A stretch of 64,000 nt of DNA from Saccostrea cucullata (Eukaryota). The stretch lies in assembly GCF_032062105.1 (NCBI RefSeq), contig NW_026931568.1, positions 310,001 to 374,000 of the forward strand. Reading direction: 5' to 3'. The notes beneath the pieces are model-generated. The model did not search any database. It saw only the letters and a program-made list of their open reading frames with translations, and was not told the DNA's origin. A program made the position numbers and the translations under genes. The stretch's first letter is position 1, and every line of letters begins with the position of its first letter. Shown here piece by piece: positions 11,962 to 34,701 of this stretch.

Positions 11962-14900
11962 TCAGTTTCTCCTTGGAGGTGGGGGCCTGGCTGGTGCCGA
12001 GGGTCGACTAGGTTTTGAACCTTCAGAGTTTCCTTTCCCTAACCTTTTATTTAAAGCACTAGTAAGTTCATTGTTAAAATTATTATTGCCCACTGGTCTT
12101 TGAGTATTCATTGTATTACTTTGAGTATTCATGGTATTAACGTATATATGTTCTAAATCGGCAGACATTCTGCCTCTTTGAGGGACTGGAGGCCTGAGAC
12201 TGTTAAATGGTTCTGATTCGTATTCGGCTAAATCTCCCTGCATGCTCAAATCCTCCATTGACCTGCTGATACTCCGGGCTATGGTGGGTAATTCGGGGGG
12301 CGGTCTACGAGAATAAAAAGTCCGTACAGAGTCATCTGAGCTCTGACTGGCTGTTGATACATTTGACGTTTCAGACATGCGTTTGTGCTTTGCGAGTGGT
12401 GACTTTGGAGGTGCCCTGTTAGGGCGGGGTTTTGGGAGAGGGTCTGTTGAACTACCCGAGCTTTCTTGATCGGGTCTTTCAAAATTCTCATCCTCTCCAT
12501 CGTCCACTTTGATAAATGGTCTCTGTTTTCTTCGAACTGTTTGACCCAAAGCTGAAACCACCTATAATTAAAAGGAATGAAGATATTTTATTTTACCTGT
12601 TGATTTTAAAATTTTCTTTTTAAGTTTTCTTTGAAATCACCTCAATTTAAATTCACCTACTTGCAACCTGGGCAAAAATTAAACTGGGGCAAAAAATTTA
12701 CCTGCATATAGTAGCTGCCGAAATATATGCAATACACATTCAGATTGCAATACACTTTGTACTTTGGAAATAATCAATATGATCTATTTTTAATTTCAGT
12801 TATAATATGGAGCAACTAGTATAAATTAAGTCATCAACCTTACCCTTGCTTTGCCTAGATAATCTCTTTTATCTACATTTTTGAGCAGTTCCTTTGGTGG
12901 ATGAAATATACAAGAATCTGGTAACTCTTCCAATTCAGGAGCTTCCTATATAACAATAAAATTTGTAAAGTTTGCATTGCCAGTTAGAGTTAATTCATAT
13001 GGGCCAGTGTAAAACAAAAGTATTTTACTATGTGCCACCGGCTCTATTTTAATTAACATTTTAATACAAGTACATGTGCAGAAAAAAAATAATACAATAA
13101 AAAATCAACTGACCTCCTCTACCCCATTTGATTGAACAACTGCATGTTTTAGAAGGGCTTTGGATTTTTTGGTTACTGGTTTACCGCTGCTGTGTTGGTA
13201 TTCTATCAACTCTTGTATTGAAGGAAAAGAAAAACCCTCAAACTTCCAGTAACTCTGTGAAATTCATGAAATGTCAAAATAACATACTGAATTGTTTTTT
13301 TTTTAGTAATTCACATTTACATATACATGCAATATTTATCAAGGTCTCTTATCACTAAGCCAAAAAAGCTCCAAGGTTCAGAATGAACATTTTATACACT
13401 GGAAGGATGAAAAGTGGAGCACCTGGCCATGAATGAGTTTCATTTTACAAAATGATAAAATAAAAAAAAAGAAAATAGAACTGGATATACATGTTTAAAT
13501 ATTCAAATACCATGAAAATACAAAGAAATATTTTTTTAACGTAGATATTGTCAAACTGCTTAACTTTCTAAAAATTACCCTCATATAAACATTTCCATAT
13601 TAACAAATTCATTAAATATTTTTCATTTTCTTTAAATGATATATACATCTACCTCATCATCCTGTATAATGAGAATATGTCTGTATCCTTGCCACAGGAC
13701 AGACAGGACGTACTGTAATGTGTTTTTCTTCTTGTTGAGACTCTCTCTGACTAGGAAATCACCTTCCTTGCGTAACATTTTCTCTGCCTCTTGCCTCGGT
13801 AGTCTACCGTGATACCAACTCTGACTGCGTAGAGAGTGTCGCCTCTTTAATGCTGAGACATCTTTTTTCATCTCCTGTAATTAATTTGCATATTGTATTG
13901 ATATCAGTTATTAAAGTAAAATGGCAGTGCCAAATTTACTCTATATGATGAATTTTTAAATTCTATTTTTTTTTTCAATGTTCAATATATCAAGTACATC
14001 TATCAATTTGTATATTTTATAAATAAATGATATATGTAATATTACTTCAATCTTTCTAATTTAAGATCACTACAGTCTATCTAGCAGGATGAAAGCAGTC
14101 TTTATACATAAAATTCTACATGAAAATACAGTGGAACTTGTATTGCAACATGAACACATTTTTAGTGAGTTCATGTACACAAATATAATAATCCACATTC
14201 CAAGGTTTACTTTCCTCAAATAACTAACAGATACTAATTATGCTCAGACATAGAAGCCTAATTGAATTAGAAATTTTCAGAGTTCAAACAGTTTTTTTCT
14301 CTTTAGAATACAAAGCCTGTAAATTTATAGATAAAATACTTTATACTAAGGTTGTGTGCACTTTTACTGCACACTGTGTCAAGTATATACCAGTAATACT
14401 TCCTCACTGACCTGTAATTTTTGTAGTGCCTGGATACAGTTCCTTCTGGTTGTATCATCATCTTCCTGTTTCATGACTGCGATCAGAAACTCCTCGGCTT
14501 CTTGTCCTCTACCCATCATCTTCATCGTGGTGGCCTTGGCAATCCATATCTGTTAGGAAAATGTGGAATATGATATACACTGTTTTATCAGAAAGATGTG
14601 ATTAGCAGTATTTAAAATAGATTCATATGTGATATTTTCAGATTCTTAAAATTATTTAATGAAAAAAAAATTAAGTATGAATGCCTGCAGTATTTTTATG
14701 AAAATTATGAATATAAGGTGAAAAAGAGACATTAAACATTAAGTTCTGTACCAGCATATGATATACATGTATGTATGCTTATGAAAACTGTCCTCGGTTT
14801 GTAACATCACCAATTTTTCTTCCCTATCTTTCAAGTAAATTACAGTATATATTTCAGGTGCACGTGCACTGTGTAAACGGGTCTTGTGCATCAATTAACA

Positions 14901-17900
14901 TTGTTACTGTACCTCTGATAGTGTCAGCTTGTAGGCCATTCCTAGCTGGTTGTAATCTATGAAGCTTGCTGATCTTAGTTTCTCCACAGCATTATCAAAA
15001 TCTGCAATGGCTTCTCTATATCTATGGATATATATTTTTGAAGATCTTGAGCTATTTTGTTTGCAGCATTCTGAGCTATTACTTCCAATTACTAAGGAGA
15101 ATTCTTCTTAGCGTCAATTTATCTTTCATTTTATATAAATAATTACATGTAAATTTTAAACCTTTGTATCAATGCAAGAAAGGAAAGTCCATTTTCATTT
15201 AAAATTACACTTTTTAAAGGGAAAATTACTAAATTTACACTGAATATTGATTTTAAAATTCTTCTTTTGTGTGAACAGTTTACATATCTTACAGGTATAT
15301 TATATGTTAATTTATTCTTTAAAATAAAACACAATAGAAAAGTAGAGGTCATAATTCTAAGCCAAATTTATGAGTACAAAAATACTCAGTGCATGGTCCA
15401 TTACATGATGAACAGCACAGTATATTGTATATCCTATTACACCAATATAAAGGTGTAACTGGGTATTAAATTAAATACCTATACATTATAGTCTTATGAT
15501 TAGTAATTTTTATCATAAGACTATGATGTTGATCAGCTTGAAAATAAAAGAATTTAAAAATTCAATTTTCAAATTTATGCTGGGAGATTGCTGGACCAAA
15601 TACAGAATCTTCAAGAGAATATTTCCTATACATATTGATCTACAAGTAAAATTGTATTGCAGCTTTCTAAAACATGTACTCCATACCTGTGAAGCTTTGC
15701 TTCTGCCAGTCCTTTGCAGAAATAGGCAATAGCCAAGTGTTGATCTTTTTGAACTGTTTCTTTGAAATTCTACAAAGAAGTTAAAATATTTAAAAACTGT
15801 AATGTATTATCATATAATAAGACAACTATTAATGAAGTAGAAAATATTAGCTCACAAAGATTATTTTGCATTATTTAAAACAATTTTATGCAGACATTTG
15901 CTTTAATCTTGACCACTTACTTAACATATTTCTTTCATCTTTCATGAAGTTAATTCAAAGTTAATAAACAAGAAATTAAGAGCTTCATTTCAGGAATGGC
16001 TTTCAAACCAATACATGTTCCAGTTTTGTCCTTGAAATTAAATCTAAAGGGCATGATCCCTAAATTGTTAAACCAATGCCCATATTGCATACCTTTTACC
16101 CAGGGGACCTCTTTAACAGGCTAGGTACATGTAAGAGTATGAGCTGCTTTAGACAATAGGTCAGAGAATAGATTGAGGATAAATATTTAGTAATATTTAC
16201 ATTTGCTGTGGTTTTCTAGTAAGCCAATAGTGAAATTGATTTGAAAACCATTTTCGTGTATACTCACACATAGAAAAACACAAGGAGAAACGTGCCCTAA
16301 CGTGATGTCACAATGAGGCTTCAGAGATGTTAGAAAAATGCAATGAAATAGGTCAGCAAGAAATTCAAATATTGAGTTTATTATTGGTGCTTTAAGACAT
16401 GGAAAATATAAATATATATAAGGAATGTTCTTAAGTTTTTGTGTGAATTATTGGTGTGTGAATCACACAGACTTGCACATATATTTCATGAAGCGCGCTA
16501 GTGCACTAAAATTCATGAAATATGCCTACGTGACAAGTCTGTGTGATAGTGCTTCATGAAAAATATGCCTACGTGCAAGTCTAGGTTAACTCACACAAAA
16601 ATAAAAAACATTCCTTAAAAGAGACATGGAAAGACAGACAGCTAAAGAATAATCATAGGAGGGTACTAATCTTTAGAATACCCACCGAGACCAAGGCATA
16701 CATTATCTAAACAAGGAAACTTCATCATGATACAGGATGTTTAAGTAACTATTTGGACAAAGATTAGATCTAGGTTAAGTGTATGGATGCTCATCTCAAT
16801 CCATTAACTGTGTGTTGATCTATCATCAACTTGAATGTCTGTCCTTAAATAAATTGATAGGATTTGATAATTTAATATCTAAAACTCAAAATTTATATTC
16901 TGAGTGCTGCAAAATTTTGCATCTATGATCCTATACTGATGAACATAATTAATATACTACGGAAGTATCATATGAGTATCTAAACCTAAGTGGGAAGGTT
17001 ATTCGTCAATCAGGATGCAATGTATGTAATTTATAAACATAAAATGTCTACAGTAGGTTGTTAATCAACATCTGTATATGTGTATAAGTAGCAGATCATT
17101 TCATTAGCTTTTCAAATGTCTCTTTGCTAATTCACTTATTAGTGGTAATTGGGGGTGGGGTGGGGTATCCAGCAAAAAATGTGAAAACTGTCAATATTTA
17201 TCTGTTGCATTGTGAATTCAGACCTGCATGGATAAAAAGACTATCCCACTCAGAACCACTGGAAAATTGTACAATTAATGCATGTCTTATTCTCATTTCA
17301 AGTGGTTAGACTGAGAAAATATTGATTGCATTGTCTATGTCTGCAATAAACTTTTATGACACCTTTTGTCCACATTGAACTTGCATCATATATTAATACT
17401 GACCTATACTTACAATTCTGTGTATATACATGTATATCTGCAACCAGGCGTTATTACAAGGATTTACCTACACTTATATAGTTTCTCTAATGTTAAAGTT
17501 TAAATATTCACTTTAGAATTACTCTATTTATTATCTTCTAGACCATTTATCACTCTTACAAAGTTGAGGTTTCAGTTATAATCAATGACATGTATATACA
17601 TGTAGCCACTTACATGTAATATACAAGTATGATTCATATAACTTCACCACGTTCACCTTTTAACATGTAAATGCACTTACTTAATTCAGTCTCATCTTTT
17701 AATGAGGAAACTGAAAAAATTGTCAAGAGTATTCTCTCATTTTTTGAAAGTACTGCTGTAGGCAATATACATAAAATGATTTTTAATCAAAGAAACCTTT
17801 GCATAATGAACACAAACAACTAAAAGCCTCTTAATGAATTGCAGAAAAACAAGACCATATAATATCTCTTCTGCTCAATATTGCTGAACTGATTGTTATA

Positions 17901-18274
17901 AATACTAATTTAAGCAAAAATTGATTTTTCAAGTAAGGCAATTTCAAATCTTACTCTTTTTATAGCCTAAAAGTTACTTTTTATTCTAATTAAACCAACA
18001 AGCAGACTCTTTACTTTAAAGAAGGAAAAAAAACAGAAATTCATAATTAGTTTCTAAAGATACCCACAACACTTGAACAGAGACATATAAAACCATTGCT
18101 TCTGCCCACAATAAGAAAAAAAATATTTTTTAGATATACATATAATGAGTTTTAATTACTATTCTCAGTCATGAAAAAAAAGAAACATGCACGTTACATC
18201 TATACGTGTGCACATGTAGTTTTCAAGATAAAATTTATGACAATATGTGGTGGAGTTGAAACAGCTGCAGGTTG

Positions 18275-18305
<31 letters not shown>

Positions 18306-18490
18306 CATACCTTTACCGCATCCTCTAATCTGTTTAGTTGGAGATAAGTAAAGGCGATGTTGTAAAAAATGCGAGCATTCGGATTTTCGATTTGCTGGAA
18401 CTTAGAAATAGCCTCTTCAAATTCCTCTTCTAGATATGAATTTATGCCATCGTTCCATGATATAATTGTGTCTTTTAGCGCCATGTTCAT
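11962..18490 (-). CDS. NADPH oxidase activator (p67phox/NCF2-NOXA1-like) with TPRs, inserted SH2 domain, activation domain and Pro-rich tail, ~522-524 aa
   Basis: Exons 18490(or 18484)-18311, 15769-15687, 15021-14913, 14549-14412, 13874-13653, 13254-13114, 12945-12844, 12561-11962. p67phox-like motifs WNDG, ARIFYNI, KDQHLAIAYF, LRSASFIDYNQLG, DYLGKARVVSAL. SH2 motifs WYHGRLPR and GDFLVRES. Confidence 0.88.
16419..16617. repeat. Imperfect palindromic TAAGGA...TCCTTA repeat in intron 1 of the NCF2-like gene
   Basis: CACAGACTTGCAC...TTTCATGAAGC inverted against TTCATGAAA...CAAGTCTGTG. TAAGGAATG/CATTCCTTA ends. Confidence 0.55.
18278..18305. repeat. (GA)n microsatellite next to the exon 1 donor
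   Basis: Direct observation. Confidence 0.9.
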
Positions 18491-22994: not shown

Positions 22995-25162
22995 ATGAGC
23001 AAAATTGAACTTAGTGAAAGCGATGACCCTGTTCGGGTCAAGGTCGTTGTTATTGGTGATATGTGCGTTGGGAAAACGGCTATCTCTCATAGATTTACCA
23101 AGAATGCCTTCGAAGAGAAAATAGCCCACACAGTTGGAGGTAGGTAGGATGTACCTGTACCAAACATTAGTTCATTTGCAATTAATAATAATTACATTTA
23201 CCTTAATTTAGACATAATAATCGATCAATTTGAATCTATTCAGCTAGCTATTATATCCGATCTATGGAAATAGAAGACAGGACTGTCCTTTTCCAAATCT
23301 GGGACACGGCAGGTCAAGAACGTTTCAGGAGCCTCGTTCCTATGTATCTCCGTGACGCCGACATAGCTTTGCTGGTGTTCGATATTACGTCACAGGTAAA
23401 TCAAAATATGTCTATTAAAATTATTCAAAACTAAAAAAAATGAGTCTACAGTACAGGACATACATGTATTCCATTTTATTTTTAAGGAGTCCTTCCACAG
23501 TTTGGAACTATGGAGAACTGAACTCATGACTAGCGCACCTGCCCACGTGACCGCAGCTGTAGTGGGCAACAAATCTGATCTGGGCAGCAAAAGAAAAATA
23601 GAGGCTACGGTAATTTCCCTTGGCTATGATTAAAATTCTTTTCCTCAAAGCAGTCTTGTACAGAGGACATGCAATCTTACAATAATACATCTCAGAATGA
23701 ACAAATCAAACAGGAACAACAACAATGTCCCTATTTTAAAGACCTATTTTATATTTGCAACACGGCACGAATTTTCAATGTCTTCAAGCACTCTGCATCG
23801 TGGAGGTGATGCTCACTCTCACCAATGGCGCTTGATCCCACCTCTGATGTTTTTGCTCTGCTCCTGATTTTTACTGTTTGAATGGACCTTAGAGCTTGTA
23901 TACTGCTCCTTATCTCCATATATTTTATTGAATATTTATAATGCGACATCTGGAAACCTTCCTGGTTTTGAATATCTACCTAACCTTACATTTCAAACGT
24001 GTTCGAATCATTTTTGTTATCAGCGCTCTTATATATCAAAGTTATAAATTGGAAGATTTTTCTTACTTCAGGCTGGTCGTGCATACGCGGTGAAGCACAG
24101 AATGCTCTACACAGAAACATCAGCAAAACTTGGAACCAATGTTGAGGAACTTTTCTATGACTTAGGTATTAAACATACTGCACGAAATATTTATTATACT
24201 CTTTTGTCTCACATGCACTTGGAACAGACGTCGAGGAACTTTTCTATGACTTAGGTGTAAAACACACTGAAAGAAATATCTATTATACTCTTATATTCAC
24301 TTAGAACCAATATTGAGGAACTTTTCTATGTCTTAGGTATTAAACATTTTGCACGAAACATTTATATTCTTTTGTATTAAATTCTCTTACATTTGTAAAT
24401 TTTGTAACTGATATATAACTATCAAAATATACTATATACTTGTATTCAGTTAGAATTTTTGTTGCAATTCAATAGATTTGTTAAACTATTTCTGGAACCT
24501 TGTATCTTGGAATTACCATTCAGCCGTTCCCATCTTATCCGCGACAAGACGTCAATTACAGTGAAACATTTCCTTTTCATGGAAATTAATTGTAGCTATC
24601 ATGTTGCACTTGTATCATGTTGTAAATTTTGCATTCACACACCCTAGTAAATTCAAAAGAACCCGCGAATTAATGGCCTACAACACTCAATCTTTCAGCC
24701 CTAAAATCAAACCCTCGAACCCGTATTTGTCCTACAAACCATGAAAACTTGCCTCTGTGGATATTTATGATTTTTCAATTTAAGTAAATCTGACCGAATC
24801 TATAACATATAAATTATTTACCCTTGATAAAGTCCTTTTTTACTTACGAGTACCGTTTTGACTCCTGCTATCTTGATATTGCGAATATGAGTTATATAAA
24901 GCAAATCCCAACTCAAATAAAGTTTCCCAAGAAATGAAGAATCTGAAAGAATGGTATAACGCTAATAGCCGTTATTTTAAATGAATTTGTATTTGTTAAA
25001 GTAGTTTTTTTCTTAATTTCAGGATTGCGGTTTGCAAACCCAGAATTAAGTGGACACATAGAAAACAGCATAAAAGTTCCAGAAAAATACAAAAACATTA
25101 TCAGTGTTCAAATTCCCCCAAAGGAAGAGACAGAATTCTCACAGAAATCGTGTTGCGGTTAA
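22995..25162 (+). CDS. Divergent Rab5-family small GTPase (copy A)
   Basis: Exons 22995-23139, 23244-23395, 23487-23609, 24072-24165, 25023-25162. Motifs [35 protein letters not shown] and C-terminal SCCG. Internal exon sizes 152/123/94 match the Rab5 gene structure as I recall it. Confidence 0.9.
24129..24370 (+). repeat. Three tandem ~80-90 bp copies of the Rab-A exon 4 3' end and splice donor
   Basis: GAGGAACTTTTCTATG(A/T)CTTAG|GT recurs, with donors after 24165, 24254 and 24336. Confidence 0.85.
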
Positions 25163-28100
25163 AACTGCATTTTTTCAAGATTTTTTTTTATGAAAAAAAT
25201 CTTTATAAAAAATGTCTGTCTTTGGTGCTAAGACTGTTGTTTTGGAAAGTTTATCAGTTTGTTTTAAAAAAATCCTTACAATATGCAATTTGACATGACG
25301 GACAATTGGCATAGTACTATATTATTATTCTTTTAATTTATCAAATTACATGTAGATTAGAATAACTATACTTTTATCATTATTATTGTTCTTTAGTTAA
25401 TTTATATTAAAACATACTTTTGAATTATATCTTTTTGGAAGTCACTGATCGACGTGGAGTTATCATAATGAAATTTCTGAAAATCTCTTCACATATCTAT
25501 CTTAATGTCTTTTGTACTTCTTAATTAATTTTCGAAAAATATAAGTTCGGGAAAAAAATTAAACGATCATTTTCAAATTCACAGAGTTTTTAAACAACGT
25601 TTTCAAAATCTTTACGGTCACTATTATTGCAAATAAGTTAAAAGATGCTACGGTTTACATCTTTCAAATATTTCTGTGAAATATATTTCATATAGCAGTA
25701 GTAAAATTGAATCTTAACTGACCAAAATTACAATATAATATTTTTCGAATAGATAATTCCTCGAAAGGTTCACAGAAGACCAATTCTTGAACAAATTAAA
25801 CATGCAGTCAGCAATGTTTGTGTTAAATGTTGGAGGCATCAATTCATTTTTTGGAATCGGTGCAAAAGTAACAAACGCTAGCTAATTATATAAAATGACA
25901 AAACTCTAAGCAAATACTGGTGACGAAGTTATGTAAACAATAAACGACTTGAACCACTCAGGAGGCTTATCATAACAGTTGCAGACTTGAGTTCGTGCAA
26001 ATATTGGGGAAGTGTACGGCTGAAAATAGATCAGCATCTAAAATAATTATGCACATACTACACGTATGTAAGTAATGAACACCGTAATTAAAATAGGAGA
26101 ACCTTTATAAATCTAAATATTTTTTTTATATTGCTGTTTTTCATTGGTAGCATTTGAATGTTGAACTATTTTAATTCTTCACAAAATACGTTTTGAATTT
26201 AAACACAATTAAATAACAATTCTGTCAAATTGCTATGTAGCGTGAATCATCCAGTTTTCAATGTCTGTTCTACTAACAAAATAATCTTAAAAAAGCCTGA
26301 AAAATACTTCCTTTTCTTTGCGCACACCAAACATGTTTGTTCTCTTTTATAATCATAGTAGCATAACACTTCATCCAATTCCGCTATTTACTTCCAGTCC
26401 AAATCGTTTTATCATGTTAATTCTTCCTTAAAGTGGGGTATCATGCAGTTCCATTTCGTGAACTCCCACGAGGATTTTTAAAAATACATTGTTCCCATGC
26501 GCTTGCTCAATTGTGAGAGGAAGTAAATTATATTTTTTAAAAATATTCCCCTTCTATTTTATCCACGTCTGTACTTAACAATGGATGAAATACACGTGTA
26601 CCTGGCTTCACCGTGAGATAAAGTCTAAAAATATGTAAACCCGATGACATCCATCTGGTCAAGGTAAGTGTTTGTGTTTTTACACCTTGTAAAGAAAAAT
26701 CTTTTGGGTTCAATGGTGCAATGATGCAGATCGGTAGAAATAAAAATACACATTTCTCATATAAGAATAAAGCTGTTCACACTTGGTTTCATCATTCGCT
26801 TCAACTTCAAGTTCAACGACATGACAAATCCACAAGGGCGATATTAAAATAATTGCACTTTCGTTTTCAGATTTCCAAATAAAAAGAGCTCATTGACAAG
26901 GAAACTGGTGTATTTGAATGTTTCTACAGCGCATTTACAGAAAAAATGATATTATAAGAGCCTCATTTTATAACAGTAAGTATATGCTTATCATTATATT
27001 GATAGACCATACGCAAAAAGTACATCTATCTCGAAAGATATGAATATATGCCCACCATCAGATGTTATATATCGGTATTCGCTTGTATCTTAAAATATGA
27101 ATAAGCTATTGATAGAAAAACTTGTGGTACAATAATTTACAATGCAACAAAAAAAAACACGGAAATTACTCATCACAAAATGCATGTATACCATGATAAT
27201 TCCTGGGGAGAAGCATGGACTCTGTAGAAGATTATGGATCACACATGAAAAAAGAAAACATTGACACTTTGTTTAAGTAGATTAAATATCAAATAGATGT
27301 TAAAATCTCAAATTTAGAGACCGAGGGGCTAAAGGAAAGCCATCTATCCCTTGGTCTTCAATAAATTGGTAATGAAACAAAGAAAAAATAGATGTATTGT
27401 TGAATCGTTTACAATGCAACAGAAAACAGTCTCCGCCCCCGGAAATTACTCATCACAAATGATTTGTGACACGTATATCAAAAATAACTCCGCCCACTTT
27501 ATAACTTTGCAGCATCCACTGTGTGAGGAAAAGCATCCGCAGTATATATATATTTCCACGGAAAACGTAAAATACTATCGGTCAAATTTGTTTTGACAAT
27601 TTAACACGTAACGAGTGATAGTCAGTCTTAATGGATGAATTGGAGGATTTAACTGTAATTGTTGTGATCTATTGTTATAATTGTAGATGGAGATTTATCA
27701 TAATTTATTTCAGGGGTCTTAAAATCCCGGTTTAACTAGATTTTCATTTTCAAATTGAATTGCGACATTAAAAAAAGTGAAAGAGACGTGTGGCTGTCAT
27801 CAGCGAGAAGGATTTTTTCCGTGATAGCGAATTTTCCGTTTCGTGTGGATTGTTCAAAATTAGGTACAAAGGATGTTTTCCGTTATTGCGATTTTTTTTT
27901 TACTTTCGATCGAAATTACGTGTAGATTCTGTGTGGAATACATTTTTAGAAATTGATTGAGAAATGTTGACATTCTACATTCTCAGGAAAATACCGGGTA
28001 TTTCTTAAAAATTAATTATAGGAAAACATCAGTATTTATTATGTGTACGTGCTAGCTTTGCTAAATTGAATCAGATTTATTTTTAGACCGTGCTGTATTT

Positions 28101-32324: not shown

Positions 32325-34701
32325 ATGAACAGGCCTAGGCAGTGTGATGACAACATCTACGTAAAAGTTGTCATCATTGGCGACAGTGGTGTAGGAAAAA
32401 CTTCCGTAGCTCAAAGATTCGTCGATGATACATTTTATGATTATACTCCTGCCTCCGTGGGAGGTAAGACTTTCAAGTAAAAGTAAGAAAGAGAGATGAC
32501 AGTAGTAGATCAGATCAAGTTCTTTGCCATAGCTTATTTTGGTAAGTCTCAAGTATTTTAATTGAACAGAATAATATGACTTTTGACATGATTTCAATCT
32601 TTAGAAACCAGAGCAGAAGAAAGAAAAAAAAAGTTTTTATTGAATTCTATATGTTTTCGAAAAAAATGTTGTATTGTGTTTGCTTTAAAAAATAAAGCAT
32701 TTATCAAGCTTTTTTTTGCCAGTTAGATTTCAAGAGTGCTTTATAGTTTACAATCTCTTCGCTGTTTGTCCCCATCTTTGAATTTAGCAGTTACACTGTA
32801 AAAAAATATAACTAGTTAATGTCACGAAGAAAACTAGTAGATTCAATGTCCATACAATCACTACCTTAATAGTAGTTTTACCAGATACTGGTATATTTAC
32901 TAGATAAGATTAGTAAATTTAGAATTGATGAGTAACTTTCACTAGGTATCTAAGTATCTATACGACCCCCGCTCCACAACTGACTATCTTAACCAATAAA
33001 CTGAAAGTTTACTAATCACGGCCAACGCTTTACGAAACACACTAGTTAAATTCACTAGGTTTTTCTTTCAGTGATATATTGATTGTGTTATCTTTATATT
33101 TACAGCAAGCTACTTCATAAAGCATCTGGAAATTGAGGACAGGAAGGTATATTTTCAAATATGGGATACGGCTGGTCAGGAAAATTTTAGGGCGCTCGTT
33201 CCTATGTATCTCAGAAACGCAAAAATCGCACTCCTAGTGTATGATATTACCAAAATGGTGAGTCCGTTAGACTGTCTGTTGCCTAAACATGTTTAGAAAA
33301 TATACTTTAAATAGAGATTTACTTCTAAATTTTGAATGAATACGGAAAACAAATTCAAAATTAATGTTATTTATGTTTAACTACTGCCAATGTTGAAAAT
33401 ATATGAATATAATTTTATTCATGTACATTATTCCTTTCAGAGAAGTGGATGGGCTTTCGCCTACTTCTATGGATGTAGGCGAAAACTTGTCCACTTCTAA
33501 TGTACATTTATATATATCTTTTTTGGAATTGTACAGTGCTTGGACCCTTGGACATGTTTTAGTTGGAAAAATGAAATTAGTTAAAAGATATTAAAGAGAC
33601 CAACTTTGAAATAATTGTCTCCATAATCTCTATAGATCTCGTTCCTGAATTTAGAAGTATGGCGTTCAGACCTTCTTCTAGCAGAGCCAGGAGTTACAGT
33701 AGCGGTTATTGGTAATAAGTCGGATCTCAAGGACGACAGACAAGTTGAAGTCAGGGTATTGTTTAAACAAAATGTTGTTTTTAATGAATTTTATATACCT
33801 TATAGAATTTAAATTCACTATGTCAGTTTCCTAAAAGTTGTTTCAAGTCTTGTTTGAAAAGCACTATATGTTTAGAACAAGTGCCAGACAAATGTTGTTG
33901 ATATGATATTTTATTCAATTTAAGACGTAGTAATAATGCTGTTACATACTGAAATTCATTTGCAAATGAATTGGTTTATAAAAAGTTAAAAACACATAGG
34001 AATATTTTTTTTCTCTATGGAACTTTAATTTTATTTCAAACCTGTCATTCATTTGACCATTTCATATGACACTGTAATCCATGAAATGAGGTTCAACTTT
34101 CTCTTTTTTAATTTTAAGAAAGGCCAGGATTATGCTAATAAACATGGTATGCTGTTCACTGAAACATCTGCTAAAAGGGGGACAAATGTAGAAGAAATAT
34201 TTTTTGAATTAGGTAAAATATTTGTACAAAAGATTTAATTCTTAAAGTAAAGTACATTATATATATTTATTTATTATAAAGAACTATATGCGGTATATTC
34301 AAATTTTGAAAACTTCCTGAAATGTGCTGAATTCAATAAATTGTATGAGAAATATAAATTAACAGAAAATATTATTGTGTCAAAGCAGTGTATTCACAAT
34401 TTTCACAACTAGTCCGATTTTATATCCTTTTTCAGAAAGAGGACAAAATGGACAAAATTTCAACAATTTTAGCTATAAAATTTATAGAGCGCAAGTTTGT
34501 TCAGGAACAATATTGACATACATGTATTTCATTGATATTATCATTTTACACATTATATCAAAATATTGATCCTGAACACACATGCGCTCGGTGACTTTTA
34601 CTCAAAATATCGAAAAAATATGTACATTTTTCTGTAAAATGCATAAAAAACTGAAATTTACGTCATGTTTGTGACGTCATTACGTATATATGGCGTCATT
34701 A

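What the first reader, a model, noticed from the sequence alone, without database searches (positions are those of the whole stretch)
11962..18490. p67phox/NOXA1-like NADPH-oxidase activator with a Fer-type SH2 domain inside it and no SH3/PB1 domains
Seen in sequence: four exons encode p67phox-type TPRs. Two exons then encode a complete SH2 domain (WYHGRLPR, intact GDFLVRES, WKFEGFSFPSIQELIEY, VTKKS, closest in pattern to the Fer/Fes SH2). The p67phox segment then resumes (IFHPPKELLKNVDKRDYLGKAR|VVSAL), followed by a Pro-rich tail. Established knowledge: p67phox and NOXA1 use TPR (Rac-binding), activation, SH3 and PB1 domains and are recruited through p47phox/NOXO1. The activation motif is DYLGKATVVASV. 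Rac-contact equivalents D67, H69, R102 and D108 are conserved here. Inference: this activator could be recruited directly to phosphotyrosine receptors, bypassing an organiser subunit. That would link tyrosine-kinase signalling to the oxidative burst in an invertebrate. I do not know of a described TPR-SH2-activation-domain architecture.
Basis: partly seen in the sequence, partly recalled or inferred. Interest (0 to 1): 0.9.

Follow-up and report, generated by a model that had tools for sequence, protein, structure and literature searches.

The report
Oyster oxidase activator with inserted SH2
In oysters, the protein that switches on the superoxide-making enzyme (p67phox) has gained a phosphotyrosine-reading module copied from the Fer kinase gene, which scallops, limpets and vertebrates lack, so oysters may wire tyrosine-kinase signals straight into this switch.

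Summary
Observation confirmed. The eight-exon, 524-aa gene is the only p67phox-like gene found in Saccostrea cucullata (XP_062570957.1, 'uncharacterized'). It reads TPR, Fer-type SH2, activation segment, Pro-rich tail. Transcript contigs of a close relative (four studies) contain the SH2 junctions, and one runs from the TPR exons through SH2 into exon 7. The same architecture occurs in Saccostrea, Ostrea and Magallana under purifying selection. The syntenic scallop gene has identical exons minus the two SH2 exons, which sit in its phase-0 intron 4. The oyster Fer gene has the same phase-0 two-exon SH2 module (58% identity): exon shuffling. A model rebuilds the p67phox fold around the insert. 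Best reading: a normal Rac-dependent activator with an added phosphotyrosine tether; its ligand is unknown, and the organiser's acidic pY-E motifs are my lead candidate. I found no description in the papers searched. Mussels, ark clams and pearl oysters are untested. The scan noted the phase-0 cassette on this window only.

The parts
18311..18490 (-). exon 1, aa 1-60, p67phox TPR start (two in-frame ATGs, 18490 and 18484)
15687..15769 (-). exon 2, TPR; D69 and H71 (human D67, H69)
14913..15021 (-). exon 3, TPR with the beta-hairpin insert; R104 and D110 (human R102, D108)
14412..14549 (-). exon 4, last TPR helices; ends at the ancestral phase-0 intron
13653..13874 (-). exon 5, linker and N-half of the Fer-type SH2 (WYHG, Arg alphaA2 R197, FLVRES R213/S215, H236); phase 0-0
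13114..13254 (-). exon 6, C-half of the SH2 and short linker; phase 0-0
12844..12945 (-). exon 7, segment that packs back on the TPRs and first part of the activation domain (IFHPP..DYLGKAR)
11962..12561 (-). exon 8, V326 (human V204), then a tail with no Pfam match, conserved class I/II PxxP motifs and three conserved tyrosines (Y408, Y439, Y465); stop

Best explanation
This is the oyster orthologue of p67phox/NOXA1. After oysters split from scallops, a symmetric phase-0 two-exon SH2 module from the Fer kinase gene was inserted into its intron 4 (shown by gene structure; donor inferred). The TPR core and the segment after the SH2 still close into the p67phox fold, so the SH2 hangs as a looped-out module (predicted). 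The protein should still bind Rac-GTP and switch on the NOX2-like/p22phox enzyme through its activation segment (inferred from conserved residues). It most likely still docks on the p47phox/Tks-like organiser through its Pro-rich tail (inferred). The SH2 adds a phosphotyrosine-dependent tether within this ordinary complex, making assembly or localisation depend on a tyrosine kinase as well as Rac. The leading candidate ligand is the organiser itself, whose linker before the last two SH3 domains holds five tyrosines in acidic context, including pY-E-E-V (speculative).
For: Spliced in four studies, one contig spanning TPR exons, SH2 exons and exon 7. Only p67phox-like locus found in the genome. 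Same eight exons in S. echinata and M. gigas; Pecten has six with identical phases and the same TTLL11-like neighbour. dN/dS of the SH2 exons 0.07-0.15, TPR 0.05-0.07, tail 0.11-0.13. Oyster Fer SH2 is two phase-0 exons with the internal intron two codons before the same Trp, 58% identical, sharing a longer BC loop. Model aligns with all 192 residues of human p67phox 1hh8, Z 26, rmsd 2.3 A, over model residues 2-313. Organiser, p22phox and NOX2-like genes present. Fer/Fes SH2 bind DEpYENVD and VpYEPV (PDB 6kc4, PMC2572732). In mammals Src phosphorylation of Tks4/5 and NoxA1 promotes NOX1 activity (PMC11657503).
Against: No binding or activity data exist. The organiser's tyrosine cluster is only weakly unusual (shuffle P 0.12 for a YExV/I motif, 0.03 for five Tyr in 35 residues) and was seen in one species only. 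The extra residue in betaD may change or weaken phosphotyrosine binding. Two Rac-contact positions recalled from the Rac-p67phox structure (S37, N104) are Ala. dS against Magallana is saturated, so those ratios are rough. The SH2 tree was unresolved.
Confidence: 0.5

Rival explanations
1. One reading: the SH2 brings the activator straight to phosphorylated receptor tails and no organiser is needed.
For: Intact Arg alphaA2 and FLVRES; no SH3/PB1. The scan noted oyster receptors with ITAM-like tails (unchecked). A Saccostrea glomerata transcriptome paper found no p47phox (PMC4892480).
Against: An organiser with PX + five SH3 and a p22phox PRR exist in this genome. The Pro-rich tail is conserved under selection. 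SH2-less scallop, abalone and limpet proteins equally lack SH3/PB1.
Confidence: 0.2
2. Intramolecular switch: the SH2 binds a phosphorylated tyrosine in the protein's own tail (Y439 or Y465) and thereby hides or releases the activation segment or the PxxP motifs.
For: Three tail tyrosines are conserved in all five oyster proteins examined and have no counterpart in the two scallop tails examined; the SH2 sits right beside the activation segment.
Against: Y439 (YE[SE]E) lacks the hydrophobic +3 residue of Fer/Fes ligands; Y465 (YVN) fits the Grb2 type from my own knowledge, suggesting outside partners. No structural support: the tail was not modelled.
Confidence: 0.12
3. The protein has been partly redeployed as a Rac-binding signalling adaptor, or its SH2 works without phosphotyrosine; oxidase activation is minor or unaffected.
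For: Altered betaD register; Asp-to-Asn in the activation motif of most oysters; new conserved tyrosine motifs.
Against: Y320, L321 and V326 of the activation segment are kept, exon 7 is 82-91% identical among oysters, it is the only activator gene found while the other subunits are all present, and both pocket arginines are invariant.
Confidence: 0.15
4. Artefact: the SH2 exons belong to another gene or a pseudogene lying in the intron, or are usually skipped.
For: The cassette is phase 0-0, so skipping would keep the frame. Contigs drop rare variants.
Against: Joints in four studies, none skipping; every full-length oyster product fetched carries the SH2; purifying selection.
Confidence: 0.03

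Closest known systems
p67phox (NCF2) / NOXA1 / fungal NoxR activators, including invertebrate p67phox-like proteins (Lottia, Ciona, Strongylocentrotus; PMC2121648)
   Same: TPR core with D67/R102, activation segment with V204, same fold. Like Ciona, Lottia, scallop and abalone: no SH3/PB1, Pro-rich tail.
   Different: About 120 residues with an SH2 domain are inserted between the last TPR helix and the segment that packs back on the TPRs. None of the non-oyster p67phox-like proteins fetched has it; PMC2121648 never mentions SH2.
Scallop NCF2-like proteins (Pecten maximus, Mizuhopecten yessoensis, Ylistrum balloti)
   Same: Orthologues: same exon phases, same 83/109/138-nt exons, same downstream TTLL11-like gene (Pecten).
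   Different: Six exons, no SH2, no SH2 remnant in the locus, no conserved tail tyrosines.
SH2 domain of Fer/Fes kinases
   Same: Best sequence and structure matches; 58% identity to oyster Fer; same two-exon layout.
   Different: No F-BAR or kinase domain attached; one extra residue in betaD; second exon 12 codons shorter than Fer's.
Src-dependent Tks4/Tks5-NoxA1 control of NOX1 in mammals (reviewed in PMC11657503, PMC7663256)
   Same: Tyrosine phosphorylation promotes assembly of a Tks-type organiser with the activator.
   Different: There the link is SH3 to proline-rich region; no mammalian activator carries an SH2.

Membership tests
p67phox/NOXA1 NOX activators | N-terminal TPR domain homologous to NCF2 | tested here: met
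   phmmer E 3.6e-22 to 1hh8 with the S. echinata orthologue; structural Z 26
p67phox/NOXA1 NOX activators | Rac-binding residues D67 and R102 | tested here: met
   D69 and R104; S37 and N104 equivalents are Ala
p67phox/NOXA1 NOX activators | Activation domain with Y198, L199, V204 | tested here: met
   Y320, L321, V326; D197 is Asn in the other oysters
p67phox/NOXA1 NOX activators | Orthology to annotated molluscan NCF2-like genes | tested here: met
   exon structure and synteny with Pecten; single copy found
p67phox/NOXA1 NOX activators | Binds Rac-GTP and activates a NOX1-3/p22phox enzyme | not testable with these tools
   partners are encoded in the genome; activity not measured
vertebrate p67phox or NOXA1 proper | C-terminal SH3 and PB1 domains | tested here: not met
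   no SH3/PB1 hit; so it is an invertebrate p67phox-like protein, not either vertebrate paralogue
SH2 domain (Fer/Fes type) | Pfam SH2 above cut-off, SH2 fold, Fer/Fes as nearest kin | tested here: met
   57 bits against cut-off 21; model alpha-beta-beta-beta-alpha
SH2 domain (Fer/Fes type) | Phosphotyrosine pocket: Arg alphaA2, Arg betaB5, Ser betaB7 | tested here: met
   invariant in alignment A6
SH2 domain (Fer/Fes type) | His betaD4 and aromatic betaD5 in Fer register (ligand specificity) | tested here: inconclusive
   one extra residue: His aligns with oyster Fer's His but is one off against vertebrate Fer/Fes
SH2 domain (Fer/Fes type) | Binds phosphotyrosine peptides | not testable with these tools
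   needs a binding assay
Fer/Fes kinase | F-BAR and kinase domains | tested here: not met
   absent from this gene; the kinase exons follow the SH2 exons at the separate Fer locus G000:C12537

The most novel reading that the evidence does not exclude
Oysters evolved an NADPH-oxidase activator whose recruitment is gated directly by phosphotyrosine: an SH2 shuffled from Fer reads a phosphorylated organiser or receptor and works with Rac as a two-key switch, a form of NOX control not described in the papers searched.
Probability: 0.55. Interest if true: 0.75.

Novelty: new variant of a known kind. Interest (0 to 1): 0.62.

Why it matters
The TPR-plus-activation region of NOX activators is conserved from fungi to humans and is treated as one uninterrupted module (PMC2121648). 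Oysters carry a whole SH2 inside it and keep it under selection in three genera. If the SH2 is functional, tyrosine-kinase signals feed directly into superoxide production in farmed oysters, and this is testable with one point mutant. It is also an unusually clean case of exon shuffling, with donor, acceptor intron and an SH2-less orthologue all visible. Side result: oysters do have a p47phox/Tks-like organiser, which PMC4892480 could not find.

Tried and rejected
Pfam PF05038 search of the genome found no p22phox and the PX search missed the organiser; short motif patterns found both, so those blanks came from small exons. SH2 tree: too short to resolve, Fer and the inserts fall in one open group; pairwise identity and intron position carry the donor claim. 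DNA comparison with the Fer locus gave only one weak exon match (67% over 117 nt): no recent duplication. ESM Atlas searches returned ordinary NOXA1/NCF2/NoxR clusters, none with SH2; small clusters are not covered. No O. edulis gene record, so its exons were not mapped. Primary papers on Tks-NoxA1 and the Fer SH2 structure were not held; reviews and PDB titles were used. Whole-protein searches and folds used database proteins of other species (P0001, P0073, P0096 and alignments of them). Exons were joined only inside local scripts for frame, dN/dS and identity checks.
Full report
Observation. The minus strand holds eight exons (18490-18311, 15769-15687, 15021-14913, 14549-14412, 13874-13653, 13254-13114, 12945-12844, 12561-11962), all GT-AG, joining in frame to 524 aa. 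Exon 1 best matches human NCF2. Exon 5 scores 47.6 bits with Pfam SH2 and its best solved structures are Fer and Fes. The model equals XP_062570957.1, Saccostrea cucullata LOC134232981 'uncharacterized', which identifies the organism. The joined window model was not sent to any search tool; searches used single exons or database proteins of other species.

Splicing. Contigs from four runs of four studies, mostly 90-95% identical to the window and so from a close relative rather than this species, cover the exons and not the introns. They show the joints between exons 2-3, 3-4, 4-5, 5-6 and 6-7 in all four runs and 7-8 in three. One 969-nt contig runs from exon 2 through both SH2 exons into exon 7, with a loose end matching exon 1. 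No joint skips the SH2 exons. Contigs drop rare variants, so a minor skipped form is not excluded. Every full-length oyster product fetched carries the SH2 motif.

Distribution. The same architecture is in S. echinata, Ostrea edulis, Magallana gigas and an unnamed transcriptome relative. UniProt labels the M. gigas protein only 'SH2 domain-containing protein'. It is absent from the p67phox-like proteins of three named scallops, three abalones, Lottia, Owenia, echinoderms, amphioxus, a sponge, a reptile and fungi. Mussels, pearl oysters, ark clams and heterodonts did not turn up in the searches, so the insertion is dated only to after the oyster-scallop split and before the three oyster genera diverged.

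Origin. The Pecten gene has six exons with the same phases and the same 83, 109 and 138-nt exons, and the same TTLL11-like gene downstream. The oyster SH2 exons sit in its phase-0 intron 4, and the scallop and abalone loci hold no SH2 remnant. The oyster Fer locus (G000:C12537, kinase exons downstream) encodes its SH2 on two exons of 216 and 177 nt, phase 0 at all three introns, with the internal intron two codons before the same Trp. The insert is 58% identical to this SH2, against 46% to fish Fes and 34-54% over shorter or partial matches to other SH2s, and shares its longer BC loop. The tree was unresolved, so the donor rests on identity and intron position. Exon shuffling of a symmetric module is the simplest account.

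Selection. dN/dS is 0.05-0.07 for the TPR exons, 0.07-0.15 for the SH2 exons and 0.11-0.13 for the tail (dS to Magallana is saturated). The SH2 is maintained, not decaying.

Structure. An AlphaFold2 model of the S. echinata orthologue (1-335) has the TPRs at pLDDT about 90 and residues 301-310 at 83, with the SH2 and linkers at low confidence. It aligns with all 192 residues of human p67phox 1hh8 across model residues 2-313 (Z 26, rmsd 2.3 A), so the segment after the SH2 is predicted to pack back on the TPRs. The alignment given to the predictor held SH2-less relatives, which favours that contact. The SH2 alone folds as an SH2, top match Fer 6kc4 though tied with other SH2s. D69, H71, R104, D110, Y320, L321 and V326 match human D67, H69, R102, D108, Y198, L199 and V204. 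Both pocket arginines and Ser betaB7 are invariant. One extra residue in betaD makes the His register ambiguous, so Fer's specificity cannot simply be assumed.

Partners. This is the only p67phox-like locus found. The genome has p22phox with a C-terminal PRR (C12811), a NOX2-like gene (C20886), two NOX5-like and two DUOX-like loci (assigned by motif from my own knowledge). It also has a p47phox/Tks-like organiser (C7265): PX exons carrying the motifs of Lottia p47phox in PMC2121648 and five SH3 domains. PMC2121648 proposes that invertebrate activators without SH3 dock by their Pro-rich tail on the organiser's extra SH3 domains. The oyster tail keeps several class I/II PxxP motifs.

Mechanism. 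Shown: architecture, splicing, orthology, selection, presence of partners. Predicted: intact p67phox fold with a looped-out SH2. Inferred: Rac binding, NOX activation, tail-to-SH3 docking. Speculative: the ligand. The organiser's last exon opens with five tyrosines in acidic context, including YEEV, which resembles the Fer/Fes ligands DEpYENVD and VpYEPV (PMC2572732); Tks proteins are Src substrates that promote NOX1 with NoxA1. The statistics are weak (P 0.12 and 0.03). I give 0.5 to an added phosphotyrosine tether within the ordinary complex, 0.2 to direct receptor recruitment without organiser, 0.12 to an intramolecular switch, 0.15 to redeployment or a phosphotyrosine-independent role, 0.03 to artefact.

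Novelty. Ten literature searches found no description of a NOX activator with an SH2; the reference survey has no occurrence of 'SH2' in its main text. The library lacks most subscription journals. The proteins are in public databases without a functional name. Verdict: new variant of a known kind, interest 0.62.

Noticed in passing
G000:C7265:14321-43760 (minus; L042, L054-L057): p47phox/Tks5-like organiser (PX + five SH3) with an acidic five-tyrosine cluster at the start of its last exon; PMC4892480 reported no p47phox in oysters.
   Followed up: partly
P0073, P0112, P0113, P0114 (scallops): Scallop p67phox-like proteins have His at the position of human R102, a key Rac contact, and EYV instead of DYL in the activation motif.
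   Followed up: no
L004, L006, L008, L010, L011: Five further divergent SH2 exons of the WFHG..DGDFLVR type in this genome, one 65 kb from Fer on the same contig; they group together in the tree; host genes unknown.
   Followed up: no
window 23025-25171 and 32349-34214 (+): Two tandem small-GTPase genes of Rab-like sequence upstream of the finding; one is syntenic in M. gigas.
   Followed up: partly
window 3265-7278 (-) and 54444-54850 (-): TTLL11-like tubulin ligase gene downstream (the synteny marker) and a further TTL-like match far upstream.
   Followed up: partly
   Followed up: no
P0017, P0030, P0044, P0115 (echinoderms): The doubled TPR-activation unit known from sea urchin is also in a sea star and two crinoids.
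   Followed up: no
window 14397 (run X3): One contig reads on into intron 4, just before the SH2 exons: unspliced RNA or a minor end.
   Followed up: no
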